Shown in pieces: positions 14,017 to 40,291 of a stretch of DNA of 64,000 nucleotides. Made by a program: the position numbers and the translations under genes. Origin of the DNA: Heptranchias perlo. Lineage: Eukaryota. The notes under the pieces were generated by a model, which was not told the DNA's origin, made no database searches, and saw nothing but the letters and a program-made list of their open reading frames with translations. Each line of letters begins with the position of its first letter. The first letter of the stretch is position 1. The DNA is taken from assembly GCF_035084215.1 (NCBI RefSeq), contig NC_090335.1, positions 48,112,001 through 48,176,000 on the forward strand, read 5' to 3'.

Positions 14017-14071
14017 ATGCCGTCACTGCACTGTCTGGTATTTTTCTTGTTTCTGCTGTTTATTTGTTGTG
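14017..14071 (+). CDS. Gene 1 leader exon (MPSLHCLVFFLFLLFICC)
   Basis: Acceptor ttttttcag lies one base before the ATG; hydrophobic signal peptide; strong phase-1 donor G|gtaagt at 14071/14072. Implies an upstream 5' UTR exon. Confidence 0.8.
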
Positions 14072-17000
14072 GTAAGTTCTTTTCCTTCCTTCTACTGGAC
14101 AATTATTTTATTGTTAATTTGAGCATCCAAAGCCCATGAATAGACTTGAATGAAGATTAAATACAAATATCAATGTGACAGATACTAGATACATAAATAA
14201 TGTGAAATGTATTTTCTCCTTTGTTCAAACAAGTATTAACTCTTACTTTATCCTTAATTGTGACTTGTTAACAAGAAGGTGGGTGTGGTAGATTTTAGAA
14301 GTGTGGTTTCATATAATGTGATTTTATTAATGGGACCAACAATCATGACTCCCTTGTATTGATGAAGCTTTAATTCTTCTCAAACAAAAAATGACCCATT
14401 TAGCTGATACAGTCGATGAAAGGTTTGGTAATCCAACTATGGAATATGCAATCTTATGTGAAAAGTTTGACCAGGAGATTTAAAATACCAAGAACAACCT
14501 TTTCCAAACTCCAAAGCCCATGCAATCCAATCAAGACAAACCAGAAAGTAACAAATATAAGTGCAAATAGAACAAAATTGCTGTGTTTCATGGGCTGGAT
14601 GCCATGCCTTGCAGAGCATGTGGCTCATTGGGCCATAGTTTGCACACTTCTTCTACGTTCTCAATATTTAATATGCGAGCAATGCTTACATCATAATAAA
14701 TTGGCTTTGGGATCAATTGCATGAAAAATACTGATTTAAATTGTGAGAATTGGACATTTTAGTGGACAAAGAAAGTGATAGGAAATTAGCAAAATGAGTA
14801 CGGTGTTTTCAACCAGGAACATGAAAGAAAATTTGTGACATTAAATACTGTGCACAACCATTAGCTTTAACAAGTAAATGCAATACCAACCAGGAGAAAT
14901 GGGAACTACTATTACATACGCCCACGATGGTTAATGGGGCACCTCACAGTCACAGTTCACACTTCGCCGTGCTGTGGAAATAAAGCTACCCCTTCAGGGA
15001 TGTTCTGCTGCCAATCTGGGAGGACACTGAGCAGAATAAAACTGAGAGGAAACATTCAGAGATTACCGGCCTTTTAAGTCAGTGCAGAAATGCAAAGAAA
15101 AGGAAATGATTAAGAAAGTAGATATCTGCCAATCTAATTTTCTTTCACTAAATTTACTGACAAGTTGCCACCATAAGATATTAGTTACTTAGTCATGATC
15201 GAGAAGTTGAAAGTTTCTGGGCAAGGAATTGATTGATTATTGCGTAAATTATTGCTCAGATTTGCTTTCCTCAACTGAAATGTTAAATATAACCAAACTT
15301 GGTTGAAACAGCACTCACAAAATTAAAAATTCTTAAGTGGTCTTAAATGGCATTTAAATTAAGGGAGGAAGGGCAGAATTCAAAGATGACTTTAGAAGTA
15401 AATTTTTCAATGGTATGCTGCTGGCACAGAGCCTAACCCACCAGGAGCGCATATTGTGAAATCACGTACACAGCCCATGATTGTCTATTCGTTTGTTTTA
15501 TTGGATGGAAATTCATTGTCTGCACATACATGATTTCATGGGGAGCATGCAATCTGAAAATCTACATCCAAAAGAAGCATATTTCCATTCAGCTCCACCA
15601 ACAAAAAATTGGATAGAATAACCAATGAGTAGAAGAGCCTTTGGGACAGAATGATATTTCAGATTTCTGTCTGACTGAATTTTATCTGCCGTCACTTGAA
15701 ATCAGCCAAGATAAAAATCTGAATTTAGAGAAGTCCATGAAGGTCATTGGTACAGTCTGTAGGATTTGAATAATTCGGCTAAAAGTATGGCACCCGACAG
15801 AATAAATCTTGGCGATTTGCTAACTTTCCACTGTGGTAATCAGCCTTGGCTCAATGGTAGCATTCTCACCTCAATGTCACAAGGTTGTGTTCGTGCCATA
15901 CTCCAGGATTTGAACACACGATCTAGGCTGACACTGTAGTGCAGTATTGAGGAGTATTGCATTGTCAGAGAGCCAGGGGACGATCAGTGATTTCCACCCG
16001 AAACAGGGGTGAAGTTGATGGAGCGGCTGAACTGCCCGTCCAAAGCTGGCATCGAAAGGACCAAACCGTTTTTGGATCTGATTGTATTTAAATGCTGCCA
16101 GTGAGCTGCAGGTGCTGAATATTTGGTCACAGATAAAACATTTCAGTGGCTTTATGTCTAGCTGTCAGACTGTGCTGTTTGTGGTTGTAACAGCCCAATA
16201 TATTTTGCTTAATTTATTTTCTAGGCTATTGTCAGGATAGGGCCAAACCATACTAAAGCCTTGGTAGAAACCTAGAAAACATTTTGAAGTTGTAAAATTA
16301 CCTTCCTATTTTGTTATTGGTTTTGTTATTGGATCTTGAAAAGTCACATAGGTCAGTGTGGAACAGCAGCGCATTGTTGTTCCAACATAATGTCAGAGGG
16401 GTAGGACATCAGATTATGATTTTATACAGTGAAGGGGAACTGCAAAGTGGAGGCCAGTTGTTATCCCTCAGGGAAATAGCCAGCCAGTGCTCTTTTTCAT
16501 TATCTAACAATCAAATCCAGAAGAAAAGGCCTGGGTCACTGTGCACCATCTAAACTGGTAACGATTCATTCCACAAAGGATGAAAATGAGGGGAGAAAAT
16601 AAAATTGAAAATGGAGCCAACGCCATTCGGCGTTATTGTTTGTTACACAATGGAATATAGGGGAACCGGTTGGGGAGGCAGTTAAAATGGACCGGGGGAC
16701 TTACCCACTCTGTTCCCACACTCTGGCCCACTGCAATTTAAATTGCAAGTGGCAAGGACACCCGCTCAAAGCCAGCAGGGTCCTTTTTAAATATGCAGAT
16801 GGGGCTTCGATGACGTCATCGCAGCCCAACTGCTATTTTTACCTGAGACCTGACCCTATCAGTGGTGGCTTCCACGCCAGGCCAAACCTGCCAGGAACAG
16901 GATCTACGGCCAGATGAGGCCAAGTAAGGTAAGTTTAAAAAAAATTTCTGTAAGGTCCCTTGTGGGCCAGTTCTTTCCCCTCCCCCGACTGTGATTCCCA

Positions 17001-20000
17001 TTTCTGAGCCACTTACCTTGTGCCGAGGACTGTTCTCTTAGGACCCCCGTGGTGGCCTTGAGCCGTGTGATTTTATCAGCCGGGCAGCCGCTTCCTGACG
17101 ACTTCCCGGCCCTTTTGATTGGGAAGTCGTCATGCGGAATCCTAATGAATCGCTGAGGCTCCCCGCCTCCGCTCCTGGAAGGTCTGGCTGATTGCTCGCT
17201 GCATTCCCATACATAGATAGAATTGACCTCATAGGGCTCGATTTTCGGACGTCCGAGACGGCGGGTTTGTGGCGGGGGGGGCTCCGAAAATCGGGGATTC
17301 CCGGGGCGGGTCCGGAGCCCAGCGCACGCAACCCCTGGGACTCTTGCCGGCAATTAAAGCCGGCGGGATCCTACTTAAACCAATTAATTAGACAGTTCAG
17401 GTCGTTTGCAGTCCTGTGAATTGTCTTTCAAGTGGATTTTTGTGTCTTACTGAAAATCTCTAAACGTAAATTCAGGTGAAACACCAGGGTGTTACAGCTC
17501 TAAAAACAACAAATTAATAGTTAGTCATGAAGCTATTGGAAATTTACAGTCGGCTCAGATTTTAAAAAAATATTCAGTACTTACCAACAATTTACATAGG
17601 CTGAGAAATTCCTCGGAGCTGGTTCTGTTTTTTCACTGTAACTTTGCCAGAAGTGAGGGGAAAACCAGATCTGAGGAATTTCCCGGCCATAATTTATTCC
17701 ATTGTATGGGTATAAAAATGTGCTTTATTGCTACTTTTTTTTAATAAATGATGAAAAAACTGATCTGGACAGGGGTTAATGTATATTTATATGAATATTT
17801 GGTGAAGGTTTTATTTGTAACTGCATTATTTTCATCCCTTATTCAGAGACGATCACTGTTTCCTCTGATAAGCACTCTGTTGCAGAGGTTGGCAAAGATG
17901 TCACCCTCACGTGTATATTTGAGGGCGACAGTAATCCTACGGTGATCTGGGAGAAAGAAGGTGTGACGGGAACTGTGCACATGTACCTGAATAATAAGGA
18001 TGACTTCAGCGAACAACATGTCAACTACACGAAAAGAACTGAAGTTCATGGAAGCTCAGCCAGCAAAGGAAACGCATCTCTTACACTGAAGAATGTTCGT
18101 ATCTGGGATGAAGGAAGTTACAAGTGCTCTGTCAACACAAACAAAGGATTTGGAGAAGCAGAAGTGAATCTGAATGTTTGGGGTATGTCAGCTGTCCAGT
18201 TCTCTTTCTCTGTCGGTTTGTAATCAGGGTAAAGTGCAGCTCGGTTTCATATTTTGAATTATTACATAAATTTCCAATGGCACCAGAGAAACAAATAGTT
18301 TTCATTTCATTTAATTGTTAACAAAGTTTGTCACAGAAAGGCAATAATAATGGATTCTCACATGGAATAGCGAGCTAAATATACGCCTGAATTTCTGCGG
18401 GGTTCTCCTGATCTCCTGCCGTAAAATCAGCAGTTATGCATCAGGTGGGCTTTGGGTGTCCCCCCACTCCCTAACCTCTAGGTGTTGAACTGCCGGCCGC
18501 CTATTTATCAGGCGAGAAACCAGTGGGTGGAAGTTGAATACCGGCCCCAGTAATTGTGCCGAACTCCATTTTTCCTAGCTAGTGAGTATAGCAAAGCAGG
18601 CAGTATAGCTCAGATCTTCTAGCTTAGTATCACTCTCAGTACCGGTCCAGTAGTATAATTGGTGAAGAGCATCCTATTTCTGTGTCTAAATGTACTGGAT
18701 CACCCGTGCGCAGCAAGGAGAGGAGGATGGAGCGGGGAAGATCACATGCCTGTAAAGATACTTGTCCAATTTTCTGTCCATTTAAATTAATAGAAGGAAA
18801 ATCAGAATGGCTCCCTTACAGGTGTGCTATTCTCGCTTCCTGATTTTCTTTTCGACACTGCGTCCAGGCAATTCAATACCTCAGGCTCAGGAACAGGAAA
18901 ATCTGCCCAATGGTGTTCTTAGAGTTAACAAAAAAACCTGAAAAAGTGACATTTGATGGATTTATTCTAATTTACATCAAGAAAAAGAACCACAATAAGA
19001 CCAAAATGGCAATGTTTACAAAGAAACTTGGCTCATCAGGACCATGTAATCATCTATATATCTTTATGCTGGAATTTGGGGCTTTGGATTAAATAAAGCT
19101 TTCAACTCATTAGTGTTTTTTTGTTCTGAAGTAAACACCATTGGTTACAGGCACATTCTTATCTATGTGGTGCTCTATATAATGACATGCTAAAGTTCAG
19201 TGACTATAATTCATATTTCTTTCTTAGCAAAAAGTAATGATGGTATCCATATCTCACGGAAGTCTGATGAAGTGCTGTCTTGCCAATCATCAGGGTGGTA
19301 CCCAGCCCCAACGGTTACCTGGCATGACAAATCTGGTAACAACTTGAACAAGGATGGTAAACTAACCCTGACAATAGACAACAATGGACTTTATAACATG
19401 ACACATGACCTAAAACAACACCGTAACTCGAAGAATCAGTATATCTGCACCATAAAGCATAAGTGGATGGAAGATCGTATTCGAGTGGTATTCTCAGGTG
19501 AGCTTATTTGTGAGGTTAATGCTTATGTTAAAGGTAACTTAACAGACCATTGTAACAGTTGTGGAAAAGAAATATATCTGTTGGGTAGAAGGAGGAACAC
19601 AGCAAGAACACGACCAAAGAGGCGGAGTAAGGATAAAAATAACCTAAGGAGAGGCAGAAATATTTTAAAGACACAGGAAACGTATACCTTGAAATTGTAC
19701 GGTGTGATATTAGAGTGAACGCTTAACATAGTCATTTGAAATTTCTTTGTCTGGTGCATTAATGGATGTATTAACCCAACAAGAGGGATTCATGAAATGT
19801 TTATTTGCAGACAGAAAGTAAAAACCCAGATCAATAATTTAAGGGATAAATTGAGTAAAACTGTTATCACATGTTAGGAATTGACTGATGTTAAAAGAAT
19901 TCTTGATATCAGTCTGCACAAATAATTGGATTAATGTCTTGTTAAAATAGCAGCTAAAGAAATGTTATTAATACAAATACATGATGTATGTTTTAGTATG

Positions 20001-22502
20001 GGAGTATTGCATTGTGTGATTTCACCCACAGTTCTAGTTTTGTAAAACTATTAGATTGACCAAAAATGAAGAATCTTTCGCTTGAATGTGACCCTTTTTA
20101 ATCTGTCAGTTTCCTCAGGAGTTGAAAGCTTAAATAAGGAACATATAGAAAACCCAACATAGATTCATATTTGTTTCAATAAGGAAACATGGGTATCCTC
20201 AAACTGGGAGTGCATACTGAAACAGGAAGGGTGTACTCCAACAGAAAGGATATACTCAAAAAGGGAGGGAATACTCAAACAGGGAGGGCCTGCTCAAACA
20301 GTGAGGAAACTTTCTATCTATGTTAAAAATTAGCATCTTTATCCGTGCTGTACTTGAAATTGTTCTTGAGGAAGAAAGTCAGGGAATGTGAGGACAGCCA
20401 CTTCAGGCCTAAGCAAATTTAGGGCCTTGTGAGTTTCTATCCCGGGGTTTTAAAGTAAGTAGGTGAGAACGTTGCAGAAGCCCTACTATAATCTTCCAAA
20501 GTTCTCTCGATTCAGGAACTATTCCTTTAGATTGAAAAATTGCACACGTCACTCTGCCATTTAAGAAAGGTGAGAGAAGGAAACTAGGGAATTATAGACC
20601 AGTTAGCCTAACATCTGTTGTCGGGAAATTACTAGAGTCTATAATTAAGGATAGAGTATCTGAACACCTTGAAAATTTTCAGCTGACCAGAGAGAGCCAG
20701 CATGGATTTGTAAAGGGTAGATTGTGCCTGATGAACCTGATTGAATTTTTTGAAGAGGTGGCTAAAGTAGTGGACAGGGGAATGTCTATGGATGTTGTTT
20801 ATATGGACTTCCTGAAGGCATTCGATAAAGGCCCTGATAAGAGATTGTTAGCTAAAGTTGAAGCTCTTGGAATTGAGGGAAAATTAATAACCTGCGTAGG
20901 AAATTGGCTGAGCGGCAGGAGACAGAGTATGGATAATGGGCAGTTACTCAAATTGACAGGATGTGACTAGTGGTGTCCCACAGGGATCTGTGTTGGTGCC
21001 TCAACTATTCACTATTTATTAACGACTTAAATGACGGGATAGAGAGCCACATATCCAAGTTTTCCGATGACACAAAGATAGACAGCATTGTAAGCAGTGT
21101 GGATGGAAGCATAAAATTACAGAGAGATATTAATAGATTAAGTGAATGGGCAAAACTGTGGCAAATGGATTTCATTGTAGGCAAGTGTCCATTTTGGACC
21201 TAAAAAGGATAGATCAGAGTACTTTCTAAATGGTGAAAAGCTCGAAACAGTGGAGGTCCAAAGAGACTTAGGGGTCTATGTAAATAGATCATTAAAATGT
21301 CATGAACAGGTACAGAAAATATGAAAAAGGCTAATGGAATGCTGGCCTTTATATCTAGAGGACTAGAATACAATGGGGTAGAAGTTATGCTACTGCTATA
21401 CAAAGCCCTGGTTAGACCACACCTGGAGTATTGTATTCAGTTATGGGCACTGCACCTTAGGAAGGATATATTGACCTAGGAGAGAGTGCAACGTAGATTT
21501 ACTGGAATGATACCTGGACTCCAAGGGTTAAATTATGAGGAGAGATTACATTATCTAGGGTTGCATTCCCTGGAATTTAAAAGATTATGGGGTGATTTGA
21601 TCAAGGTTTTCAAAATATTAAGGAGAACTGATAGGGTCGATGGAAAGAAACTATTTCCGCTGGTTGGGGAGTCTAGGACTAGAGGACATAGCCTAAAAAT
21701 TAGAGCCAGGACTTTCAGGAGTGAAATTAGGAAACACTTCTACACGCAAAGGGTGGTAGAAGTTTGGAACTCTCTTCCACAAACGGCAGTTGATGCTAGC
21801 TCAATTGTTAATTTTAAATCTGAGATTGATAGATTTTTGTTAACCAAAGGTATTAAGGGTTATGGAGCTAAGGTGTGTATATGGAGCTAGGTCACAGATC
21901 AGCCATGATCTCATTGAATGGTGGACAGGCTCGAGGGGCTAAATGGCCTACTCCTGTTCCTATGTTCCTATGAATAAATCAAAATGTTCTCATTTTTTAA
22001 AAAGTAATTTTACATGAATATTACAATCTCCACAGCTGGATTAACAAACTTTGGGACATTTACACTGGTTGTAGCTTATTAGCTCTTGAGAAGCTTTAAA
22101 AGATTGTTGTTAGTGGTGCTGAATGATTGGTAGCTATCTTTTGGGTTCCTATTAACAAAATCACATCTTGAAGACGTGCACATTTCAAAACTGTGTTCTG
22201 TTGTTAAAGAAAAATAGATACTTCTGTCATTTTTTTTAATGGAAGGGGAACTAGCCCAAGGTTAAATATAAAATGGAAATCACCCACACTCTTGCTTTTA
22301 CAGTATTTGAAATAATCTGAAGGTATCTTGAACAATTATCTTAGATATTGCCAACCTCTATTGTGATGGCACTGTTTTTACACATCTGCACATCATAACA
22401 CAGCACTAGCAGAAATACTGATATGTCTTTATATTTCCTTTATTTTCAGACATGGGAGCGATGATTCGTTTAGATGATGGAAAAGATTCGCCAGAATTAT
22501 AA
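14017..22502 (+). CDS. VTCN1-like: Gene 1 (spliced): B7-family IgV-IgC protein, V domain VTCN1/B7-H4-like; exons 14017-14071, 17847-18182, 19228-19497, 22450-22502; 237 aa, no TM in this model
   Basis: All introns are GT-AG and phase 1, and the 714-nt joined CDS is open from ATG to TAA. The V domain carries B7-H4-like motifs (W.KEGV.G.VH, KD..SEQ, GNASL.LKNV, D.G.YKC, T.KG.G.A). The C domain carries the B7/butyrophilin motif C.S.GWYP.P.V.W. Orthology to VTCN1 versus another B7/BTN-like member is not proven. Confidence 0.8.
15838..15972 (+). mobile_element. tRNA-derived SINE 5' fragment
   Basis: A-box-like TGGCTCAATGG and degenerate B box, followed by a SINE-like body. Confidence 0.55.
16650..17420. 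mobile_element. GC-rich non-autonomous DNA-transposon (Harbinger-type MITE) fragments
   Basis: 16840-16970 is closely similar to 61325-61465 (aggccaaacctgcc.ggaac...gaggcc.agt.aggtaagttt); family assignment is inferred. Confidence 0.5.
17599..17688. mobile_element. 90-bp MITE with 16-bp TIRs and a 3-bp TSD
   Basis: GGCTGAGAAATTCCTC ... GAGGAATTTCCCGGCC, flanked by ATA on both sides. Confidence 0.7.
17847..18182 (+). CDS. Gene 1 IgV exon (ETITVSSDKHSVAEVGKDVTLTCIF...VIWEKEGVTGTVH...GNASLTLKNVRIWDEGSYKCSVNTNKGFGEAEVNLNVW)
   Basis: Acceptor attcag|, donor G|gtatgt, 336 nt open; canonical B-strand Cys, C-strand Trp and DxGxYxC; overlaps ORF 17942..18223. Confidence 0.93.
19228..19497 (+). CDS. 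Gene 1 IgC exon (AKSNDGIHISRKSDEVLSCQSSGWYPAPTVTW...NQYICTIKHKWMEDRIRVVFS)
   Basis: Acceptor ttcttag|, donor G|gtgag, 270 nt; B7/BTN-type C domain with two Cys; overlaps ORF 19200..19718. Confidence 0.9.
20196..20309 (+). repeat. Degenerate 6 x 19-bp minisatellite (TACTCAAACAGGGAGGGNN)
   Basis: Six aligned units read directly. Confidence 0.75.
20435..21972 (+). mobile_element. CR1 LINE 3' half, degraded, in intron 3 of gene 1
   Basis: ORFs 20722, 20970 and 21486; TTCCTATG tail. Confidence 0.9.
22450..22502 (+). CDS. Gene 1 probable terminal coding exon (DMGAMIRLDDGKDSPEL*)
   Basis: Strongest acceptor downstream of the C exon (ctgat branch site, long pyrimidine tract, tttcag|); phase-1 join stays open to TAA at 22500-22502. 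Confidence 0.6.
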
Positions 22503-22621
22503 ATCAAAAGCTGTGTTGCCGTCGGAGACTTCAAATAGTTTCTCTGAACAATTCTTTGATCCTCATTAATGCATTGCAAAACTTTTCCAGAAGGAAAACT
22601 ACGGATGTTATACCCATTTAA

Positions 22622-23471: not shown

Positions 23472-23788
23472 ATACCCATTTAAAGAATTGTCTGTTTCTT
23501 TGCTATAGATCAAGGCATGAATAAGGAATACTTTTGCCTTTGAAAAAAACTCACTGAGTAACTGGGAGAGAAATTCAACTGACAGCTGTCCCTTTTGCAC
23601 CTGAAAAACGTTAGAAAATCGGGGCTTAGGGGGCACCTCGGCCGATCCATTGACCCTGGTGTCCTGGGCCTGTAAATAGGTGAGCAGCCCACCCGCCTGA
23701 AATAGGCAAGAGGCTGCTTAAATGTGCAAATTGGAGCCTCCGTCTGTTGTAGGACCTCGATTCAAATTTAGGTACAAATGGATGGAGC

Positions 23789-30586: not shown

Positions 30587-30718
30587 CGGTTCAACGAGCA
30601 GCCAGTGTGATGTAACGCACTGTGCGCTACAACCGCAATAATCTCCCAGCGATCTTAACTTTCTTTAGAATAGCCAACAGGTCTAACCAACTGGTAACAC
30701 AATGCTTTCTTCAGCAAT

Positions 30719-30767
30719 ATGGGTCCATTTAGAAACATTGTTCTCAAACTTTGGTTCCTTGTATTAG
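30719..30767 (+). CDS. Gene 2 leader exon (MGPFRNIVLKLWFLVL)
   Basis: ATG, hydrophobic stretch, donor G|gtaagc, then a 92-nt intron to the V exon. Confidence 0.82.
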
Positions 30768-33700
30768 GTAAGCGTTCTCTTTTACCCCAGTTAACATTTA
30801 TTCTAGTTGTACTCAGATCATTTGGATTTTATGTTCCTACTTGTAATTTTATGTCCCAGGGCCTGCTGTCGGTCTGAGAGTGATCCAGTCTCCTTCAGTT
30901 CTGTCCCTCCTGAGAGGACAGACAGCTCGGATCAACTGCACCCTGTTACCCGGAGAGGAGCGGGTGGATTCGGTGAGATATTACTGGTATAGAACAAGAG
31001 ACAATCCTGGCATCAGAGGCAACGAAACTAAGAATTTCCTCAATCAAAGCTCTCGCGTGTCTGTGTCTGAGGGTTCGCTTGTCATTCGGGAGGTGATTGT
31101 GAAAGATTCAGATACTTACCACTGCCTGGTTCTTAAAGAGACGCCTCGACCCGGGAGAACCTTGACAGGAGAAGAAACAGAACTGAACATCCAAGGTAAT
31201 TATGAAATAAAAACAGAAAATGTTGGAAACGCTCAATAGGTAAAGCAGCATCTGTGAAGCGAGAACCAGAGTTAACGTTTCAGGTCGATGACCATTCATC
31301 AGAACTGGAAGAATTTAGACATTTAAGTTTCTAAGGTCATGGACCTGAAACGTTAATCCGGTTTCTCTCTCCACAAATACTGCCTGACCCGCTGAGTGTT
31401 TCCAGCATTTCCTGTCTTTATTTCAGATTTCCAACATCCGCGGTATTTTGCTTTTGATCCATGGTAATTAGATTAACTAAAACTGAAATAATTCAATATA
31501 TGGGGCAAAGGAAACAGAAATAGCCGCACACACATCTAATCTGGGACTGACATGTTCTGTGCACTGGGAGCTAGGCTGAATACACCAGCGTTTAGCTTTA
31601 ATTCCACAATAACCATTCAACAGCAGGGACTTTCATATAGTTTTAAAACTTCGACGGAAGAAAAACAACCAAAAGACAAAACTGTAGAATGCTGACACCA
31701 ATATTAACGGCTGAATATTATTTATGTAAGAAGCGAATTACAAATAGCTAAACGGATTTTGTGAACTAAGTATTGTCAATTTATTTCAGTTTTCTTGACG
31801 ATATTGATCCAAAGAAAAATAAACGGAATTTGTGCCCGATAGAAACTTATTGTGAAGTCACGGGATATTATTCTGACCCGTTTTTCATTGTTACATGTGT
31901 GTTATATTTTATTATATGTATCTGGTGATTTGTATATTGAGACACAATCTAATCAAATTGATTCTGCAGTTTCCCATTTAATATCAAATATACACGTTTT
32001 ACATCTTTTACACAGTTGTTCTCTATATAATATTTGCTGTAACTCAGATTGTTATAATTTGAGTTATTTTAATGTGTTTTTTTAGCGGAACCTCAAGTCT
32101 ATCTCTCTGCGGATCCAGAGAATGAAGTTGCTGGGATTCAGACTCTGATTTGTGTGGCTGTGGGATTTTTTCCGAGAGATCTGAACATTTCTTGGATTGT
32201 AGAGGGAAATGTCTCCCATCAAACAGAACAGGGCTCCCCGACTGTAAACAGTGACGGCACCTACAACCTGAGCTCCCGGCTGTGGATTAGAGACACTCAC
32301 TGGGACCGGGGAACGGTCGTCACCTGTCAGGTACAACACGTTACAGTCCTCGGCTCAGTGAGGAAAAAGATCAGTCACAGCGGAGGTAAGTTGTTTACGA
32401 AGGGGATAAATCCCACAGTTCGCTACTCCCAGTTACTGTTAATATACGGAGGTTAAAATAGCAATTTTGTACAACCATATGTAAAACGCGACTCATTAAT
32501 CCGGATAGAATTACAAACAGTAACGCGGTATGAACACTGGAAACATACGGTCTCAATTTTATACATAGCAATGAACAAATTGCACTTCTAAATAAATTAA
32601 ATTGATACAATGGACCCGCGGTGTTTTATTGGTAAATATTACAAATATTGCTGGTATATTGAGAAGGTAGGGGGTCAATTGAAATGGGCAACAATAACCA
32701 ACTAGACTGAAACGCAAACAGCTGGAAATTCACAACAGCTGGGACCTGATGTAATATCTCAAATATTTCTCTTTACAGATGCTAACTGACCTGCTATGTA
32801 TTTCCAACATTTACGATCTTTTGTGCTTTATTTATGCCGACTAGATAGATTCGCTTTTAGTAACTGCGTTGTACAGCAGAGAGTAACTCAAAGAAATATA
32901 AAAATGGCATGCAAACACCAGCGAGTTTTAAACCGTTGTTCTAATACTGAGCTGTTTAAGAGCTGCAGTAATTTATAAACAGCCCACTGTGGAATCGCTC
33001 TTAACTCCTGAGTTCTAGTATGAAAAGGGGCTGACTCGATAAAATATGATAAATGACAAAAAAGCACAATCACTAAATATCATTTGTTTAACTGAAAAGT
33101 TCTGCATCACTGAATTAATTTAATTTATTCAAGCTTCATGAATCGACAGAGAAAAAGTTGCCGGAACCATAATGGACAACGTTTAAACAGTACAAAATAG
33201 GCAAATAAAACACCTTCATATTGGATATAAGGACATCCCGATCGTGGAGGTTATGCCTCAGAACCGCTGTACTGTGCTCACTCTGAGTTACCTTGATTTC
33301 TATATTTGAAAAGGAAGAACTTAGAAGGAAGGGGAGGAAAGGGACGTGAAATAAGGTTAGGTAAAAGCTAGCACGGACACATGAGCAATGGGCCGAATGG
33401 TCTCCTGTGCTGTAATTTCTATAGTTCCGATTAACAACCCTTTGCCATTTAATCAGTTTACAGAATTCTCAATTTCCGTAGCAGCTGTGAATAAACTGCA
33501 CACATTTTTGCAAATAAAGCGCCCAATATTACCAAACGAATACTGTGCATATCAATGCAGAAGTGGCATTATAACATTTACATGTCTTCCACCAAGTCTC
33601 CGCTTATTTATTCAGTTATGTACACAGGCAATCGCCCTGATTTCAGGTTAAGGGTGATATTGCACCCCTACATCTTTGGATGCAGAATGAACAGTCTTAC

Positions 33701-36700
33701 AGTCACTAACCCTGCCAACTCCATTGTTTAGTTAAATTACAAATCACGTCGATCTTTTAGATTCTGAAGGAGAATTTGTCCATTCAGTTCATTCCTTCAC
33801 ACCCCAGACCATTAAAAGGCACTGTATCCTGTTTCCATCCCTGCTCATTAAAGCCCAATTAATAATAATATGACTTTAATCCCCAATCTCGACGTTTTTT
33901 TGTACAATTATTTAGCGCGTGGTTGTAACCCACTTCTTTAAGGCAACATGTGCAAATGAAACAGCGAGAAGACAGATTTAAAACATACAAAGACACCGAT
34001 TAGCCGCCAGCAGCGGTGAGAGCTGCGTTTACACAGCCCGCTTCAAGCGCTTGAGATGGTGAAGGTTGTGAGATGGCGTGGGCCAATTGTATTTGTGCGT
34101 CTGCAGGAAACTTTGCATAATAATCTTGGACAGCAGTGAATTCATTACTGACTTGAGAAGTATTAGGGAATGGGAGCACAGGGGCTTGCCTTTGGCTGCC
34201 ACGGTTTGGTTGATGCATAGTGTTTTTTTGAGCGCGTATCAATGCAGAAGCGACATTATAACTCAGAAGACAACAGAATGCGCTAAAAACGTTGGGGGTA
34301 TGAGATTTCCTCTTGTAGGCTGCCTCCCATTGGTTTCTGTTTCCAAAACGTGCAGTACAAATACAGTCTTAACTTTAAAAAAATGTATTTTATGCTGCCA
34401 TTATGTGCTAATGGAAGCATAAAATATTGACCTGCCAGGCCGGAAAACTAACAAAAGCTGATCAACTGCTTCAGAAAAGCTCACACAGCCCCAGAAAAGC
34501 TGGTAGCTCAATAAGAACCTTCAATATAGGCCACCTCACACATGAAGTCAAGGAGCTAGACTGAGAGTGTAGTGGGATATGGGTTTGCCATAACAATCAG
34601 CAGGTATAGCCAACAAACAGCAACAGTAGTGATTTAGAAATTACTGAAGAAAGATGTGAATGTTGAAGGCATGAGATTTATTTTCTATGGGAGAACCACC
34701 CCCTTCAGAATAGTTTGACTTTTGATAACTGATTTTGTGTATGTATTGACATTTTGGAACTTACTGTAATTCTAAATCTTGGTGTGATTTTAAAAAAATC
34801 AAACAAAATGCATCACCCCATTTTATTTCCAAACTCAGGCAATTCCATGATGCAGTCACTTGTATTCTCAAATAAAGATATTTGGCGTTATCTCAAAAAG
34901 GCAGCTGCAACCACACTTTAAGAAAAGAAACCTTCAAATGAAACAACAGGCAGGCATGCCCCAAATGGTTCCTTTGAGGAAAATAAACGTTTTAAAAGCT
35001 GTATTTTAGCAGCTTATTTACTATATACAAACTTCTTTTGAAGTAATCACTAAATAAGCACACCTTTAAATGTGACTCTCAGAAACCATCAACTCATTTT
35101 CAATTGTCCACCTCAAGTTTGCACCCATGAAACAATGAGAGAAAGTAGCACCTGATTTATTCTAGTTCTGTCCCCCAACCAGTCAGGTCCTGACAGGCTC
35201 CAGTCCCACCATTCAAATGATCTGATTGATTTATACTGACAACCTACAATGCAGGTGAAAAAAAGTTGAAGTTTCTTGTGAAACACTGACAAACTGACAG
35301 GTTGGAATATTAACCGTCAGTTTGAAACACTGATGGTTGTCATGTATGCATTGATGCAAAACAAAAATTGTGTAAGCCAACTTTAGGAAGTAGTCTTGCT
35401 AAGATTACAGTTGGATATAGTCAAATCTATGGGGTGAGGGGATGGGAAGGAGAAAGCATGCATAAAGTACTTCTGCAATTGGCCAACATAATTTGAGCAG
35501 AGAGTTGAGGTTACGCTGCCCTCTTCAAACCTGTGCTACTGCTGTAGCAGAGAGTAGCGGGGGTGGGATGGGGGTGAGGGAGGTTCAGTAAGAAGGTGGC
35601 AGAGCATTGGTTTTGTGCACTCAAGCACACACAGATAATTTGCTTACTAATCTCTGACCATGGTAGATTTATTACCGATCATGAAGAGTTAGAGAATGGA
35701 AACACAACAGGCTGTCTTAGCATTTAACATTATTTTTGAATATCTATACAGATGTTTGGTACAAAGTGAAAATATCACAAGACCCATCTCTTAGGGTGCA
35801 GGTATACAGCTAATTTTGTAATGATGCAAAGTAGTTTTGGGTGTGCTTCAATTAAAAGTGGTAATATAACTCAGGAAGCTATGCAACACACTAAAGCAGT
35901 GAGGTTTGACATCGCTCCAGGCAGTGGTGACATCCCTCATGAATAATGGGGCTGCCATCATAGAGATCTAGGACTCCATGGAAGAATGGGCTTTCTTCTC
36001 CAACCAATAAAAAACTGCTACATTTAATTGCGGATTATTAGTAGAAATAGGATAATGCATGATTATGCAATATTACTATTTCTACAGATGGAAGTATTCT
36101 TGACATCTATTCCTCAATGGAGTTCCTGCTGGGTGAATCCTATTGGTATATTTCACAAGAACAAGCCAATTCAAAAACTCATAAATGACAGATATTAACT
36201 ATATTTCTGATTCAATATATGGTTTAAATAATATACATGATGTGAATTTAAAATTATTATATGTAACTTAATATACATTGGTCATGTTTGTAATAAGCAA
36301 CTAATGATTTTGATTCACATTTCAATCATAATTTTGAAGGTTTCCCCAAATACTACTATTACTTCAGCCTGCTGAGTCTCATCCTCGTTGCACCATTTTG
36401 TCTCTGGATTATTAAGAGTCAGTGCAATAAACTGAAGAATGGAAAAGGTAATCAGATACAATGTGCATTTTATTTTGGTACTGAACTAAACATATCAAAA
36501 ATGAAAAACATATTTAAATCCTAGAAGAAATAATTCCAATAAAAATACATTTTAAAAAATGAAAACCAATTACATTTTCCATCTAAAATACAGTATTTGG
36601 AATGAACATACTAACTGTATACTAACTGATAGAACATACTATCTGCAAAATTAATATAATTAAGCTAAGGGAACTGTACTAATATAGGTGTATATGGAAA

Positions 36701-39700
36701 TATTTTAACACAGCTAAATATAAATATATTCACATTCAACTATCCTAACATAGCTTTCATGTGTAAATGATGAAGCCTCAAATGTAAGTAAGTTAAAAAT
36801 GGGAATAGTGATACTCACTAGTTATTGACTCTTTTTACTGTTGCTTCTCACTACATACACCACAATACTATAAGTTACCCTAAGGCATTTATGATATTCA
36901 TGATATTCATTTAGATTCATCGATCCATGACAAAAATGTAGATGGTCAAATAATGGGAACATTGGTGAATGCATCAGTAAATGAAGTAAGTATATTGTTT
37001 GATATTTTTCCTACACTGTATGCATCTGCACTGTGCTGAACTGACCGTGCATTATAAAGCAATGTCAACTTACTTAAATAAATTGGCAGCACTCTTGGAC
37101 ATGATGCACTGGGAACACAAAGGGGCCAGAATATCTGGCGCCAGTGGGGTGGATTTTTTTTTACCACCTGGGTGTTAAGCATTGCCTGGGCGGAGCGCAG
37201 CGAGAAAAATTGGGTGGGGAGGATCACATCACTGTTATGGGGCCTGCCCAACTTTCCTTCCAGCATTAATTGGTACTAGCATGGAGTTTGCAAAATCTTT
37301 CTGCAAAATCCATTCCAACTTCTTCTATGTACTCAGGGCCCACAGTCTCAAGGGTCAGCTTCTCCTGGTGCCTTAGGGGTTTGATATTCAGATGGGCTCC
37401 AACAGTTTTGTGCCATTTCCTTCTCTTAGGGGCTCCTTTTTCCTGTAAGCAGGTATAAAATGATGAAGTGTAGGGAGTCTGAAAAGTGCACATATTGCCA
37501 CAGTACATCCAAACTTATACACAACTCAATGAGCTAGCAGCATTCACATAGATGATAATGGAAGCTACAATGGTGGGCATAGTTATTCTGATGAGTGAGC
37601 ATCATAAGTTTTCCTTGGAAGCAGGCATGTTAATGTGTGAAAGAAGCTGAAGAATGGCACGTGTCCACATTCCAGATGCAGCTGGTTAAGATAAAAGTCT
37701 TTGTTCCAGGTATGCTGTACCCATACACTTGATGTAGGTAAATGCAGCAACTCTTACCTTGGCAAACTTCCTCCAGGTGGATTTTTTTTTCATCTGGACA
37801 GGAGACCTGGACCTATACATTGGGAGGGTTGCATTAAATCATTGTGACCTCATGCCAGGCAAACCAGACAGCTATGCTTTGTACACCTCTGTCCCAAGAA
37901 GAGCAGTCCCTTTTTGTTGCACCTCTTCCTGAAAAGCTCTACAAGGCTGAGTCAAAAAAGTTGGTTGTCATTTCACTTGGCCCAGGCCTGCTTCCATCTT
38001 AAGCCTTCTTTGACTTGATTTCAACAAGTTTCACCTGCCAAAAATAACCTATGCTGAATGCCGCAGAACTCCTTTAAATAATGTTGGCAGCACTTCTTAT
38101 GAATTGTTGCTATGCTGGGTATACCGTTCACACCATTAGCTTGCTCGCTGCACAGGGATCAATGAATAATTATGTGAATAAGCAGTCTCTGAATGTCGCA
38201 GAAGGTCTACTCCATGTTCCTTCATTGCGAGCTGTGCTTACAGCATCCAGTCTGGGCTGCAATTAGCTCAGACAGGAAAATCTACCCTTAAGTTACAAGC
38301 TATCCAGGGCAAGGTTGTCCAAGGATTACTGACATTAGCAATATAGGTCAGACTTGGGAACTTTAATACACTTTGTTTGTAAATTCTCCAAATTGAAGAA
38401 GTTTTGGGACCAATGCTGAAGCAACACGTAAGTCTACCGGCCTTGCTACGATAATCTAGGGAAATACTAAAGGTGGATGGGGAAGGGTGCTATTTCTCTA
38501 GAACTACCATTTATTTAGTTCTAACACTTTTGGCCCTTAGTTAGAAGATGATAGCATTGTAAAGGTTGCAAGCCAAAACCAACTGAGGAATATTCTTTGA
38601 AATAATAATAATCAACTATGAAAGCGATGATACTAGGATTTTGCATTGGATCTCAGTCTTGTTAGCTAATTGTTCCAGGATGTAAAATGATGAATTGCAA
38701 TCCCCCAAAAAATCTTTGTTTTTTTATTTGGCTACCCCACCTGGTTCAGATGAATGACAATAATAGTGTCATTGGATCTTCCCTTGCCACAATGGCGTAT
38801 GTGGCTTATGTAATTCACATTTAATGGACTATTTTATTTTAAACTATTGCTGAAGTTTAACTATTAATGAATCCCTCTTTGAAGTTCTGTCATTTTTTAA
38901 TCAGTTTTCGCTCTTCTACTCCTGAAAGCATTTACTCGCACTGGAGTATGGCACAGCAGCTGTCACATAATTTGTCCAGATGGCTTTTCTTCATGTGTTT
39001 AGTCCAGGCAGTGAACATTAGCAGGTTGTTTGACCATAGGGGTAACATGGGCAAGTCCAATCATGTGCACATGCACACACACTTTCCAGCAGGAGTCACT
39101 GGGAAGCATTCAGGAGTACAAACCTTTTTCTATTCCTAGAACAATAGCACTCAGGCCAACTGTACTGTACTAGCTGTTGCCGGATTGAGATCAGGGAATC
39201 AAAACTGAAATCTTCTGGTCTGTATGGATTAATAAATAGTGGGTGAGGCTTAACCCACTAGTCCATCACTAAATATACTGCAGCAGAGAGGGATTGGGGT
39301 TGATTGTTGTCTCTGGCACATATCGGGTGGGTGGTGAATGGGGTGTCTGCTCCGCCCACCCAATCACATCGGCGGAGACCGGATCGATTTTAGCGGCCGG
39401 GTCTCACTTAAATACAACAGGTGAGCTGTCAGCTCTAATTACGCTACTTATAGGGAGCTTGCTGTTTGGGTGGGCCGGAAATCTATCGGGCTGGCCACCA
39501 TTTAAAGACATCCTGCATTCTTGAAAGGCAAGGTTCACTTTTCAAAGATGGTCTGTAGACAGTGCATTATTGAGGCAGCAGGCAGCATGATATTGGACAG
39601 GGCCCCCCAATTCTCCAATACAGCTGTGCAAGTCCAAATGAGGAATAGGAAGGAGGTCGTTTTTACCAGCGAAGGGTGCCAAGTGCCCTGGCAAATTAGC

Positions 39701-40291
39701 CAGCAGCAGTGGAGAGAGCTGGCTGGGCATATAAATCGTTGATTTCAGTGGAATGAAAATCAGACAGGGTCTCTAAAGGGTATGTGATCCACCCGGTCAG
39801 AGTACTGCCCAGGCAGTGAAGACAAAAATCTACAGTTTAAGTTGCTTCCCATTGGATGTTTGCTGTTGGAGTTGGATTATTGCCATTTCCATGTAGCACA
39901 ACTGGAAGACAACATTTATGTTAATTAAGGTCATGCCAAAAAATGGTATAATGAGAAAATGTGCCGTGTTTTTAATGATATCAGCATGTATGTTCTTGTT
40001 GTTTATTGTTACTTTATTACTATGTTACAGGGTAATGTTTCTGCCAGCAATGAATCTCTGCATTATGCATTTGTTCAATTCAATCATCCTCTAAAAAGGA
40101 AGCAAAAACAGGAATTGAAAAGACCACAGCAGGACCAGGCAACTGAATATGCTGTTTTAAAGGTCAAAGATAAAAATAATCCATTCTATGAAGAATCGGT
40201 ACATTACTCCACAGTCGGCATTTGTCCCACATCAAAGAGAACACAAACTGCTAACTACAATGCAACCATATATGTTTCGCTTAAGCACTAA
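30719..40291 (+). CDS. Gene 2 (spliced): non-rearranging VJ-C1 type I membrane inhibitory receptor (PRARP/VJC1/SIRP/NKp30-like architecture); exons 30719-30767, 30860-31195, 32086-32385, 36340-36447, 36915-36985, 40031-40291; 374 aa
   Basis: Six exons with GT-AG introns of phase 1,1,1,1,0 join into an open 1125-nt CDS: leader, V with J-like end, C1 domain, TM, and a cytoplasmic tail with four tyrosine inhibitory-type motifs. Confidence 0.85.
30860..31195 (+). CDS. Gene 2 VJ-type IgV exon (GPAVGLRVIQSPSVLSLLRGQTARINC...YYWYR...DSDTYHCLVLKETPRPGRTLTGEETELNIQ)
   Basis: Acceptor cccag|, donor G|gtaat; Ig/TCR-like V.QSP start, C, WYR, D..TY.C, and a J-like G strand TGEETELNI in the same exon; overlaps ORF 30880..31239. 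Confidence 0.93.
31203..31457. mobile_element. Penelope-derived inverted-repeat element with a hammerhead-like motif (31270-31306, - strand)
   Basis: Imperfect inverted arms; the - strand reads AGUU-CUGAUGA-AU-GGUC-AUC-GACC-U-GAAAC-GUU-AACU. Confidence 0.7.
32086..32385 (+). CDS. Gene 2 C1-set exon (AEPQVYL...TLICVAVGFFPRDLNISW...NSDGTYNLSSRL...W...TCQVQH...)
   Basis: Acceptor tttttag|, donor G|gtaagt, 300 nt; C1 hallmarks P.VY, C...GFFP..L.I.W, N.DGTY, C.V.H; overlaps ORF 32154..32456. Confidence 0.93.
36340..36447 (+). CDS. Gene 2 transmembrane exon (GFPKYYYYFSLLSLILVAPFCLWIIKSQCNKLKNGK)
   Basis: Acceptor ttttgaag|, donor G|gtaatc, phase 1-1, 108 nt; about 21 uncharged hydrophobic residues followed by basic residues. 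Absent from the ORF track. Confidence 0.8.
36915..36985 (+). CDS. Gene 2 short cytoplasmic exon (DSSIHDKNVDGQIMGTLVNASVNE)
   Basis: Acceptor atttag|, strong donor GAA|gtaagt; its 71 nt convert phase 1 to the phase 0 required by the last exon. Confidence 0.72.
38930..39268 (-). mobile_element. Old tRNA-head SINE, possibly DeuSINE-type
   Basis: Degenerate tRNA-like head at the right end on the - strand; body recalled as Deu-domain-like; unverified. Confidence 0.4.
39290..39830 (+). mobile_element. Harbinger-derived remnant with Myb/SANT-like fragment
   Basis: RAPQFSNTAVQV...RKEVVF...QQWRELAGHIN in ORF 39521..39742. Confidence 0.55.
40031..40291 (+). CDS. Gene 2 terminal cytoplasmic exon with LHYAFV, TEYAVL, VHYSTV and TIYVSL motifs
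   Basis: Acceptor tgttacag|; open to TAA at 40291 (ORF 39959..40291); two ITIMs and two TxYxxL ITSM-like motifs. Confidence 0.87.
   Translation, partial: GNVSASNESLHYAFVQFNHPLKRKQKQELKRPQQDQATEYAVLKVKDKNNPFYEESVHYSTVGICPTSKRTQTANYNATIYVSLKH

What the first reader, a model, noticed from the sequence alone, without database searches (positions are those of the whole stretch)
14017..40291. Tandem B7-H4-like ligand and non-rearranging VJ-C1 inhibitory receptor: candidate linked checkpoint pair in a cartilaginous fish
Seen: two intact spliced IgSF genes on the same strand, about 8 kb apart, and no other host gene recognisable between them. One is a B7-type V-C protein; the other is a VJ-C1 receptor with ITIM and ITSM-like motifs. 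Established: B7 proteins bind V/VJ-domain receptors (CD28, CTLA-4, PD-1, NKp30 with B7-H6), and mammalian B7-H4 is inhibitory with no agreed receptor. Inference: gene 2 could be the receptor for gene 1, making this a compact ancestral ligand-receptor cassette whose receptor half may be lost in mammals. Adjacency alone does not prove binding.
Basis: partly seen in the sequence, partly recalled or inferred. Interest (0 to 1): 0.9.

Follow-up and report, generated by a model that had tools for sequence, protein, structure and literature searches.

The report
Shark B7-H4 gene beside SIRP-like receptor
Two real and already annotated shark immune genes lie side by side, a B7-H4 relative with no membrane anchor and a SIRP-like inhibitory receptor, but nothing beyond their adjacency suggests that one binds the other.

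Summary
The window matches Heptranchias perlo RefSeq proteins at 100% identity.

Gene 1 (14017-22502, + strand) is the RefSeq protein named VTCN1/B7-H4 (237 aa). Its V domain scores 75.1 bits against human VTCN1 IgV, against about 38 bits per B7-H3 V domain. All 11 elasmobranch orthologues examined lack a transmembrane segment.

Gene 2 (30719-40291, + strand) is a RefSeq protein misnamed "immunoglobulin kappa light chain-like" (374 aa). Spliced contigs from four runs of one sample join C1, TM, a 71-nt exon and the tyrosine-motif tail exon. The tail carries two ITIMs, two ITSM-like motifs and NPFY.

Orthologues were returned from 13 other named elasmobranch species, mostly named SIRP-like. Rays also have near-identical charged-TM, short-tail forms, which marks a paired-receptor family. 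The best single V+C1 match among solved structures is SIRPα.

VTCN1 and the gene-2 orthologue sit on contigs of identical length in 5 of 5 species where both were listed. No binding evidence exists. First-stage notes on this window had already flagged parts of both genes.

The parts
14017..14071 (+). Gene 1 (VTCN1/B7-H4 orthologue), exon with the start codon and an 18-aa signal peptide. The donor is G|GTAAGT, phase 1.
   Evidence: Sequence read. The translation matches the start of P0001.
17847..18182 (+). Gene 1 IgV exon (336 nt, phase 1-1).
   Evidence: Sequence; Pfam V-set 7e-09. Per domain, human VTCN1 IgV (4gos) scores 75.1 bits against 38.3 and 38.8 bits for the two CD276 V domains.
19228..19497 (+). 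Gene 1 IgC exon (270 nt, phase 1-1).
   Evidence: Sequence; Pfam C2-set_3 (BTN3A2-like Ig-C) 1.8e-13. Best PDB matches are BTNL8 and BTN3A. P0001 matches at 100%.
22450..22502 (+). Gene 1 last coding exon. It encodes ...DMGAMIRLDDGKDSPEL followed by a stop, with no hydrophobic segment.
   Evidence: Sequence; matches the C-terminus of P0001. Nine of the 11 orthologues end in a similar ..[IV][RQ]xDDG..[DE]L peptide; Pristiophorus P0114 and Leucoraja P0002 differ.
22503..30718 (.). Intergenic stretch of about 8.2 kb in which only transposon-derived ORFs were recognised.
   Evidence: GIY-YIG hit at 22932-23264 (-) and DDE_Tnp_4 hit at 26396-26776 (+). Reverse-transcriptase-like ORF tail at 29824-30294 (-), judged by eye from the translation. 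No Ig exon was found.
30719..30767 (+). Gene 2 exon with the start codon and signal peptide (MGPFRNIVLKLWFLVL). It is followed by a 92-nt leader intron.
   Evidence: Sequence; matches the start of P0100.
30860..31195 (+). Gene 2 V exon with a germline-joined J-like strand (..TGEETELNIQ), 336 nt, phase 1-1.
   Evidence: Sequence; Pfam V-set 4.2e-10. There are only weak PDB matches to IgL, VNAR and TCRα V domains. Orthologues are 54-71% identical.
32086..32385 (+). Gene 2 C1-set exon (300 nt, phase 1-1).
   Evidence: Sequence; Pfam C1-set 2.1e-13. Per domain it scores 44-45 bits to IgG CH3 and 32.5 bits to a UrIg2 C domain. Its last letters appear as the loose end before the TM exon in all 4 runs.
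36340..36447 (+). Gene 2 transmembrane exon (FPKYYYYFSLLSLILVAPFCLWIIKSQCNKLKNGK). The hydrophobic core has no charged residue.
   Evidence: Translation. Spliced contigs cover it in the three runs whose pieces are listed (X2-X4), and the joints appear in 4 of 4 runs. KD(19) is 2.1. RefSeq isoform X2 (P0106) skips this exon.
36915..36985 (+). Gene 2 small cytoplasmic exon (71 nt). It shifts the phase from 1 to 0.
   Evidence: Joints 36445>36913 (GT..AG, cut +2) and 36985>40031 (GT..AG) occur in 4 of 4 runs. Translation.
40031..40291 (+). Gene 2 tail exon coding part. It carries ITIM LHYAFV, ITSM-like TEYAVL, NPFY, ITIM VHYSTV and ITSM-like TIYVSL, then a stop.
   Evidence: Sequence; motif scan. 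Y300, A301, Y328, A329, L331 and K332 are invariant in 8 of 8 aligned family members.
40292..40576 (+). Gene 2 3' UTR as far as the contigs reach. An AATAAA lies at about 40567-40572.
   Evidence: Contigs end at 40406 to 40576. Sequence.

Best explanation
These are two separate, intact and already annotated immunoglobulin-superfamily genes of the sevengill shark Heptranchias perlo. They lie next to each other in an IgSF-rich region.

Gene 1 is the orthologue of VTCN1 (B7-H4). It encodes a signal peptide, an IgV domain, an IgC domain and a short conserved C-terminal peptide. In elasmobranchs it has no membrane anchor, so it is most likely secreted (inferred).

Gene 2 is the inhibitory member of a SIRP-like paired-receptor family. 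It encodes a single-exon V domain that already contains its J-like strand, one C1-set domain, an uncharged transmembrane helix and a cytoplasmic tail. The tail has two ITIMs, two ITSM-like motifs and an NPxY motif.

By analogy with SIRPα, PD-1, PECAM-1 and the Siglecs (recalled knowledge), ligand binding would lead to tyrosine phosphorylation and recruitment of the SHP-1/SHP-2 phosphatases, damping the cell that carries the receptor. This mechanism is inferred, not shown. Near-identical ectodomains on charged-TM, short-tail proteins in rays would deliver the opposite, activating signal through an adaptor (inferred).

The ligand of gene 2 is unknown. The adjacency to VTCN1 is best read as membership of a local IgSF gene cluster, not as evidence of pairing.
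For: - Identity: gene 1 matches P0001 (XP_067849049.1, VTCN1, H. perlo) at 100% on the C-exon query, and P0001's sequence and accession agree with my exons. Gene 2 corresponds to P0100 (XP_067848433.1), whose 374 aa read the same as my six exon translations.
- VTCN1 assignment: human VTCN1 IgV is the best per-domain match at 75.1 bits, against 38 bits for each CD276 V domain and 45-46 bits for MOG.
- No anchor: 11 of 11 elasmobranch VTCN1 orthologues are 231-244 aa long, with a maximum KD(19) of 1.27 or less outside the signal peptide.
- Gene 2 transcript: GT..AG joints C1>TM>71-nt exon>tail occur in contigs of 4 of 4 runs from one sample. Those runs hold 0.32-0.38 of the sampled words of the V-intron-C1 stretch, close to the exon share of 0.42.
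- Family: orthologues named SIRP-β1-like or SHPS-1-like occur in sharks and rays.
- SIRP likeness: the profile of 8 family members gives its best single-stretch PDB score to SIRPα d1-d2 (67.7 bits, query 21-217), ahead of UrIg2 (59.2 bits). The family consensus G-N-G-T-x-L-N-I-Q-A-K-P aligns with SIRPα's GAGTELSVRAKP.
- Paired forms: P0085 and P0110 have an Arg in or beside the TM and tails of 2 and 15 aa. P0085 groups with its ITIM counterpart P0084 in the tree.
- Tail motifs: the first ITIM tyrosine and the TEYA tyrosine are invariant in 8 of 8 aligned members.
Against: - No functional data exist for either protein.
- SIRP membership is not established. SIRPs have two C1 domains and sharks have one. 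UrIg2 and Ig heavy chains have higher summed PDB scores. My tree had no Ig, TCR or UrIg sequences, and the deep branches had support of only 80-88.
- In H. perlo the second Gly of the J-like G-x-G is Glu, the only such case among the 8 aligned members.
- The anchorless VTCN1 models are automatic predictions. I could not lay reads on gene 1, so a further membrane exon used in some tissue is not excluded.
- The four runs are one sample and are recorded only as 'RNA?' (a guess). Low-depth contigs also cover intron sequence in X1.
- The two genes share a chromosome-scale contig in 5 of 5 species.
Confidence: 0.75

Rival explanations
1. Gene 2 is the receptor for the B7-H4 orthologue next to it, and the two have been kept together as an ancestral ligand-receptor cassette. 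The receptor half was later lost or moved in mammals.
For: - The genes are on the same strand, 8.2 kb apart, with only transposon remains recognised between them.
- Both lie on contigs of identical length in 5 of 5 shark species where both were listed.
- B7-type ligands generally bind V or VJ-domain receptors (recalled knowledge).
- Abstracts from 2025-2026 still describe the B7-H4 receptor as poorly understood.
- An anchorless VTCN1 could act as a soluble ligand.
Against: - Adjacency is the only argument.
- The nearest solved relative of gene 2 by single V+C1 stretch is SIRPα, which binds CD47 (recalled knowledge).
- The receptor family has paired activating forms, which no known B7 receptor has (recalled knowledge).
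- Known B7 receptors (CD28, CTLA-4, PD-1, NKp30) have a single V domain and no C1 domain (recalled knowledge).
- First-stage notes report more IgSF genes immediately upstream, so a neighbouring IgSF gene is expected here (unchecked).
- Adjacency in other species could not be checked (closed). Accession numbers are no proxy for position: they are 616 apart in H. perlo although the genes are adjacent.
Confidence: 0.07
2. Gene 2 is a true orthologue or co-orthologue of tetrapod SIRPα. It recognises a shark CD47 as a self marker on myeloid cells, which would date the CD47-SIRP axis to the base of the jawed vertebrates.
For: - The best single V+C1 PDB stretch is SIRPα, and SIRPγ ranks tenth of 9788 matches.
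- The J-to-C1 junction motif is shared with SIRPα.
- The tail has four tyrosine motifs, and paired activating forms exist.
- NCBI names most orthologues SIRP-like.
- Tetrapod SIRP-like proteins (Rhinatrema P0058, Thamnophis P0077) are among the few V-C1 proteins hit by the V exon in a library of 1.84 billion representatives.
Against: - Sharks have one C1 domain rather than two.
- The locus is beside VTCN1, not in a region I could relate to the human SIRP cluster.
- Thamnophis SIRP sits on a very long branch outside the family.
- A 2026 survey table dates the SIRP family to Tetrapoda (PMC13262535, passages seen).
- No CD47 data were examined.
Confidence: 0.25
3. Gene 2 is a non-rearranging relic of the antigen-receptor lineage, like UrIg and UrIg2. 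It would work as a dimeric recognition molecule rather than as a SIRP-type self sensor.
For: - UrIg2 has the top summed PDB score for the family profile (1.3e-34).
- The V exon's only PDB matches are IgL, VNAR and TCRα V domains.
- The V and J are in a single exon.
- The region would belong to an MHC paralogous region on human 1p13. This is my inference from the VTCN1 assignment and was not tested.
- The literature treats VJ-C1 genes in MHC paralogous regions as possible precursors of antigen receptors (PMC10751288, passages seen).
Against: - UrIg2's score is summed over three C domains. Its best stretch (59.2 bits) is below SIRPα's (67.7 bits).
- UrIg and UrIg2 have three to nine C domains and lie in the MHC or the antigen-receptor complex (PMC12227049, abstract and passages).
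- Gene 2 has an ITIM tail and paired activating counterparts, which are features of innate paired receptors.
Confidence: 0.1

Closest known systems
VTCN1 / B7-H4 (human, solved IgV structure 4gos)
   Same: Signal peptide, IgV and IgC layout with phase-1 exons. The V domain is the best per-domain match in the PDB at 75.1 bits. NCBI gives the same name to this gene and to 10 elasmobranch orthologues.
   Different: There is no hydrophobic C-terminal segment in 11 of 11 elasmobranch proteins. The protein ends instead in a short peptide, conserved as ..[IV][RQ]xDDG..[DE]L in 9 of the 11. That mammalian B7-H4 is membrane-anchored is recalled knowledge. The TRIM45 neighbour is known only from a first-stage note.
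SIRPα / SHPS-1 and the SIRP paired-receptor family
   Same: N-terminal V domain with a J-like strand followed by ..AKP and a C1-set domain. SIRPα is the best single V+C1 stretch among solved structures. The tail has four tyrosine motifs. Activating forms with a charged TM and short tail exist in rays.
   Different: Sharks have one C1 domain rather than two; rays have a second through recent duplication (P0006, P0101). The genomic neighbourhood differs. The ligand is unknown. Orthology is unresolved.
UrIg / UrIg2 (elasmobranch non-rearranging VJ-C1 genes; PMC12227049)
   Same: Germline-joined VJ exon spliced to C1-set domains, found in elasmobranchs. UrIg2 has the top summed PDB score for the family profile.
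   Different: UrIg2 has nine C domains in nurse shark and lies in the antigen-receptor complex; UrIg is MHC-linked (passages). The word ITIM does not occur in the paper's main text (0 occurrences). Gene 2 has one C1 domain, an ITIM tail and paired activating forms.
B7H6-NKp30 and other B7 ligand / V-domain receptor pairs
   Different: Those receptors have a single V domain and no C1 domain (recalled knowledge). No binding or co-evolution evidence was obtained here.

Membership tests
VTCN1 (B7-H4) orthologue | Signal peptide, IgV and IgC ectodomain of the B7/butyrophilin type | tested here: met
   Pfam V-set and C2-set_3 (BTN3A2-like Ig-C) hits. Exon structure read.
VTCN1 (B7-H4) orthologue | Closer to VTCN1 than to other B7 proteins | tested here: met
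   Per domain, 75.1 bits to human VTCN1 IgV, against 38.3 and 38.8 bits for CD276, 45-46 bits for MOG and about 38 bits for PD-L1. No phylogeny was made.
VTCN1 (B7-H4) orthologue | Membrane anchorage through a C-terminal hydrophobic segment | tested here: not met
   11 of 11 elasmobranch orthologues have a maximum KD(19) of 1.27 or less after the signal peptide. In the window, the only hydrophobic ORF end near gene 1 (19986-20042) has no usable phase-1 acceptor that I could see.
VTCN1 (B7-H4) orthologue | Conserved synteny with TRIM45 and MAN1A2 | not testable with these tools
   TRIM45 is reported about 22 kb upstream of the window only by a first-stage note.
SIRP family | N-terminal V domain with a J-like G strand joined in the germline | tested here: met
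   A single V exon ends ..TGEETELNIQ and splices to C1. Seven of 8 aligned members have G-x-G-T-x-L; H. perlo has G-E-E-T-E-L.
SIRP family | Two membrane-proximal C1-set domains | tested here: not met
   There is one C1 exon and no other Ig exon in the window. Shark orthologues have one. Ray proteins P0006, P0086 and P0101 have two near-identical copies.
SIRP family | Inhibitory member with ITIM-type tyrosines, paired with activating members that have a charged TM | tested here: met
   Two ITIMs and two ITSM-like motifs in P0100. P0085 and P0110 have a charged TM region and tails of 2 and 15 aa. The H. perlo activating copy is known only from a note.
SIRP family | Groups with tetrapod SIRPs in a phylogeny, or shares their synteny | tested here: inconclusive
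   The best single PDB stretch is SIRPα. The tree of 19 rows had no Ig, TCR or UrIg rows, long branches for the tetrapod rows and support of 80-88.
SIRP family | Binds CD47 | not testable with these tools
   This needs protein binding assays.
Rearranging antigen receptors (Ig/TCR) | Separate V and J segments that are joined somatically | tested here: not met
   The V and J-like strand are in one exon with an ordinary GT donor. The RefSeq model matches the germline sequence exactly.
UrIg / UrIg2 | VJ followed by three or more C1-type domains, linked to the MHC or the antigen-receptor complex | tested here: not met
   One C1 exon only, and the locus is beside VTCN1. UrIg features were taken from PMC12227049 passages.
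Linked B7 ligand-receptor pair | Physical binding of the two ectodomains | not testable with these tools
No binding data exist.

The most novel reading that the evidence does not exclude
In elasmobranchs B7-H4 is a secreted factor, and the SIRP-like VJ-C1 paired receptors encoded around it are its receptors. On this reading the long-sought B7-H4 receptor would be a SIRP-type molecule, and the gene pair would be a surviving ancestral checkpoint cassette of the jawed-vertebrate MHC paralogous region.
Probability: 0.07. Interest if true: 0.85.

Novelty: new member of a known kind. Interest (0 to 1): 0.35.

Why it matters
If the pairing were real it would give a concrete, testable candidate for the B7-H4 receptor, which abstracts from 2025-2026 still describe as poorly understood.

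What the evidence does support is more modest, with three points of interest:

1. Cartilaginous fish have a SIRP-like VJ-C1 family with inhibitory and activating members. Proteins of the same architecture occur in a paddlefish and a caecilian. A 2026 survey table dates the SIRP family to Tetrapoda (PMC13262535, passages seen).
2. It is a further non-rearranging VJ-C1 gene, by inference in an MHC paralogous region. The antigen-receptor-origin literature is actively looking for this kind of gene (PMC10751288 and PMC12227049, passages seen).
3. Elasmobranch B7-H4 is predicted to be anchorless in all 11 species examined.

NCBI's name for gene 2 in H. perlo, "immunoglobulin kappa light chain-like", is misleading.

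Tried and rejected
- I searched gene 1 for a membrane exon. Hydrophobic windows in 19.5-30.9 kb gave six candidates. The one near the gene (19986-20042) lacks a convincing phase-1 acceptor, and the RefSeq model and 10 orthologues all use the 22450 exon instead. I rejected it.
- I looked for further Ig exons in the window by tblastn of the five exon translations and found none.
- I first thought the tail exon might not belong to gene 2, because the TM exon ends in phase 1 and the tail exon starts in phase 0. The 71-nt exon seen in the contigs resolves this.
- I tested whether RefSeq accession numbers could stand in for gene order. They cannot: they are 616 apart in H. perlo, where the genes are adjacent, and 2 apart in Heterodontus.
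- The Atlas search gave only generic V-C1 neighbours such as tapasin-related proteins, SIRPα and Ig heavy chains, and was not decisive.
- The tail's weak hit to Pfam DUF4578 (24.9 bits, below the cut-off of 27) led nowhere. No paper holds the term.
- Rfam and tRNA scans of 13000-41500 found nothing.
- Literature searches for a described shark SIRP-like or VJ-C1 gene beside B7-H4 found none. This covers only the held library. Flajnik et al. 2012 on B7 evolution is not held.
- I did not search any exon-joined model of my own. My models were searched exon by exon. The full-length proteins used in later searches were those returned by the tools.

Full report
**What is in the window.** The window has no N runs. 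On the + strand between 14.0 and 40.3 kb there are four immunoglobulin-domain exons and no others: a V-set and a butyrophilin-type Ig-C exon at 17.8-19.5 kb, and a V-set and a C1-set exon at 30.9-32.4 kb (Pfam). A tblastn of these exons and the tail exon against the whole window found only themselves and their weak cross-matches. The rest of the window is dominated by ORFs that look retrotransposon-derived, judged by eye from the translations. One is a 750-aa stop-free reverse-transcriptase-like frame at 8607-10856 (part of the output was cut).

**Gene 1 structure.** Reading the splice sites gives four coding exons: 14017-14071, 17847-18182, 19228-19497 and 22450-22502. All introns are phase 1 with GT..AG ends. 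A search with the natural ORF around the C exon returned a 237-aa protein at 100% identity, named [quoted passage not shown] (P0001, XP_067849049.1). Its sequence reads the same as my four exons, including the odd last exon that encodes ...DMGAMIRLDDGKDSPEL. The window is therefore from the sharpnose sevengill shark, and gene 1 is already annotated.

**Gene 1 identity.** By summed score the V exon's best PDB hit is 4Ig B7-H3. Per domain, human VTCN1 IgV scores 75.1 bits against 38.3 and 38.8 bits for the two B7-H3 V domains, so the VTCN1 name is justified by sequence. A first-stage note places TRIM45 about 22 kb upstream of the window. TRIM45 is the human neighbour of VTCN1 (recalled knowledge).

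**Gene 1 has no membrane anchor.** The search with P0001 returned ten further elasmobranch VTCN1 proteins of 231-244 aa. In 11 of 11 the highest 19-residue Kyte-Doolittle mean after the signal peptide is 1.27 or less. Nine of 11 end in a similar ..[IV][RQ]xDDG..[DE]L peptide; Pristiophorus P0114 and Leucoraja P0002 differ. Elasmobranch B7-H4 is therefore predicted to be secreted. These are automatic models and I could not lay reads on gene 1, so a tissue-specific anchored isoform is not excluded.

**Gene 2 structure and expression.** The splice sites give a signal exon (30719-30767), a 92-nt leader intron, a V exon (30860-31195) that ends in a J-like strand, and a C1 exon (32086-32385), all in phase 1. 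The tail ORF at 40031-40291 starts in phase 0, which at first did not fit the phase-1 end of the candidate TM exon (36340-36447).

Four runs of one sample hold 0.32-0.38 of the sampled words of the V-intron-C1 stretch. That is close to the exon share of 636 of 1526 bases. Laying their contigs on 34600-40599 showed two GT..AG joints in 4 of 4 runs: 36445>36913 (cut +2, so 36447>36915) and 36985>40031. The loose end before the TM exon spells the last letters of the C1 exon. The 71-nt exon restores the reading frame.

The transcript is therefore signal, V, C1, TM, 71-nt exon and tail. The 1125 coding bases equal the 374-aa RefSeq protein P0100 (XP_067848433.1), named "immunoglobulin kappa light chain-like isoform X1". 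Isoform X2 (P0106) skips the TM exon.

Three caveats apply. The runs are one sample. They are recorded only as a guessed RNA. X1 also has low-depth contigs over intron sequence.

**What gene 2 is.** The tail has LHYAFV and VHYSTV (ITIM pattern), TEYAVL and TIYVSL (ITSM-like) and NPFY. The TM core has no charged residue.

The V exon, searched against 1.84 billion representatives, found 80 proteins at E of 0.001 or better. Only four were at E of 1e-20 or better, and all four are elasmobranch proteins of 54-71% identity. NCBI names three of them SIRP-β1-like or SHPS-1-like; the fourth (Narcine) is uncharacterized. A search with the catshark orthologue P0005 found 15 proteins. Together these come from 13 further named elasmobranch species; Rhincodon was added.

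In Pristis, P0085 has almost the same V-C1 as the ITIM form P0084, but a TM region with Arg and a 2-aa tail. Hemitrygon P0110 is similar. This is the pattern of paired inhibitory and activating receptors. A first-stage note reports a charged-TM VJ receptor upstream in H. perlo as well (unchecked).

**Relation to known V-C1 proteins.** A profile of eight family members (A1) searched against the PDB matched 9788 sequences. By summed score the order is UrIg2, IgA1 and IgG chains, then SIRPα. By single stretch, SIRPα d1-d2 is best at 67.7 bits, aligned continuously over V and C1, ahead of UrIg2 at 59.2 bits. The family's G-N-G-T-x-L-N-I-Q-A-K-P aligns with SIRPα's GAGTELSVRAKP. H. perlo alone has Glu at the second Gly (1 of 8).

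Among the weaker V-exon hits I named 18 of the 80. The V-C1 proteins among them include a caecilian "SHPS-1-like" protein (P0058) and a paddlefish protein (P0074). P0058 has V, C1, TM and four tyrosine motifs. P0074 has a TM region, PQHYYYF..VP..IWILKK, that resembles the shark one, and it carries two tyrosine motifs. A snake SIRP-β1-like protein (P0077) is also among them.

I built a maximum-likelihood tree of 19 rows: 11 from the elasmobranch family, 5 other V-C1 proteins and 3 VTCN1 as outgroup. The tree recovers the elasmobranch clade (91/98). The other V-C1 proteins fall outside it with support of 80-88 and long branches, so it does not settle SIRP orthology. I therefore call the family SIRP-like, not SIRP.

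**The ligand-receptor idea.** The evidence in favour is adjacency, plus the fact that VTCN1 and the gene-2 orthologue lie on contigs of identical length. This holds in 5 of 5 species where both were listed: Heptranchias, Heterodontus, Mustelus, Scyliorhinus canicula and Stegostoma. That shows the same chromosome, not adjacency. Accession numbers cannot serve as a proxy for position.

Against it, the receptor's nearest solved relative binds CD47 (recalled knowledge). The family is of the paired kind. Known B7 receptors lack a C1 domain (recalled knowledge). The region appears to hold several IgSF genes (notes). I could not fetch other species' loci.

**Literature.** Abstracts from 2025-2026 say the B7-H4 receptor remains poorly understood and propose galectin-9 as a binding partner (PMC13588502 and its preprint, abstracts in the listing). 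UrIg and UrIg2 are the described elasmobranch non-rearranging VJ-C1 genes (PMC12227049, abstract and passages). VJ-C1 genes linked to MHC paralogous regions are discussed as possible precursors of antigen receptors (PMC10751288, passages). A 2026 survey table lists the SIRP family under Tetrapoda (PMC13262535, passages). Five searches found no paper describing this family or its position beside VTCN1. Supplements were not available.

**Verdict.** The identity of each gene is well supported. The inhibitory mechanism is a standard inference from the motifs. The pairing is an untested guess, which I put at about 7%. Interest is moderate. It rests on three points: a mislabelled SIRP-like VJ-C1 paired-receptor family at the base of the jawed vertebrates, an anchorless B7-H4, and a cheap and decisive binding experiment.

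My models were searched exon by exon, and the full-length queries were proteins returned by the tools.

Noticed in passing
window 22450-22502 and P0001-P0003, P0111-P0118: All 11 elasmobranch VTCN1 proteins examined lack a transmembrane segment. Nine of the 11 end in a conserved ..[IV][RQ]xDDG..[DE]L peptide. The C-terminal D/E-L is faintly reminiscent of ER-retrieval signals, but positions -3 and -4 do not fit that motif (recalled knowledge).
   Followed up: partly
window 36340-36447; P0106: RefSeq isoform X2 of gene 2 skips the 108-nt TM exon in frame. This predicts a soluble V-C1 protein that still carries the tyrosine-motif tail. The contigs laid all contain the TM exon.
   Followed up: partly
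window 31165-31190 (J-like strand of the gene 2 V exon): H. perlo has G-E-E-T-E-L where 7 of 8 aligned family members have G-x-G-T-x-L. The second glycine of the bulge motif is replaced by glutamate.
   Followed up: no
P0006, P0086, P0101 (Hypanus and Mobula orthologues): Ray orthologues carry two near-identical tandem C1 domains. This gives a SIRP-like V-C1-C1 layout through recent internal duplication.
   Followed up: no
window 37160-37204: Many very short contigs (35-56 nt) of high depth lie here on the minus strand in X2 and X3. X4 has one plus-strand piece here, and X1 shows only loose ends. The loose ends run on into sequence unlike the window. This is probably a repeat fragment expressed elsewhere in the genome. 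Rfam and tRNA scans found nothing.
   Followed up: partly
window 8607-10856 (+): A 750-aa stop-free frame that looks, by eye, like a reverse-transcriptase/endonuclease ORF2 of a CR1/L2-type LINE, probably a young copy. Similar long frames occur at 59827-60882 (-) and 62693-63973 (-). No Pfam scan was run on these.
   Followed up: no
window 22932-23264 (-) and 26396-26776 (+): A GIY-YIG domain ORF (Penelope-like element) lies just after the gene 1 stop codon, and a DDE_Tnp_4 (Harbinger-type) transposase fragment lies in the intergenic stretch.
   Followed up: partly
window 3440-3680: A long run of GA/CT dinucleotides, which translates as RERERE or SLSLSL in several frames.
   Followed up: no
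window 35063-35300 and 37432-39965: Run X1 alone has low-depth contigs (depth 3-11) across the introns of gene 2. This means either unspliced pre-mRNA or some DNA in a run whose type is only guessed.
   Followed up: no
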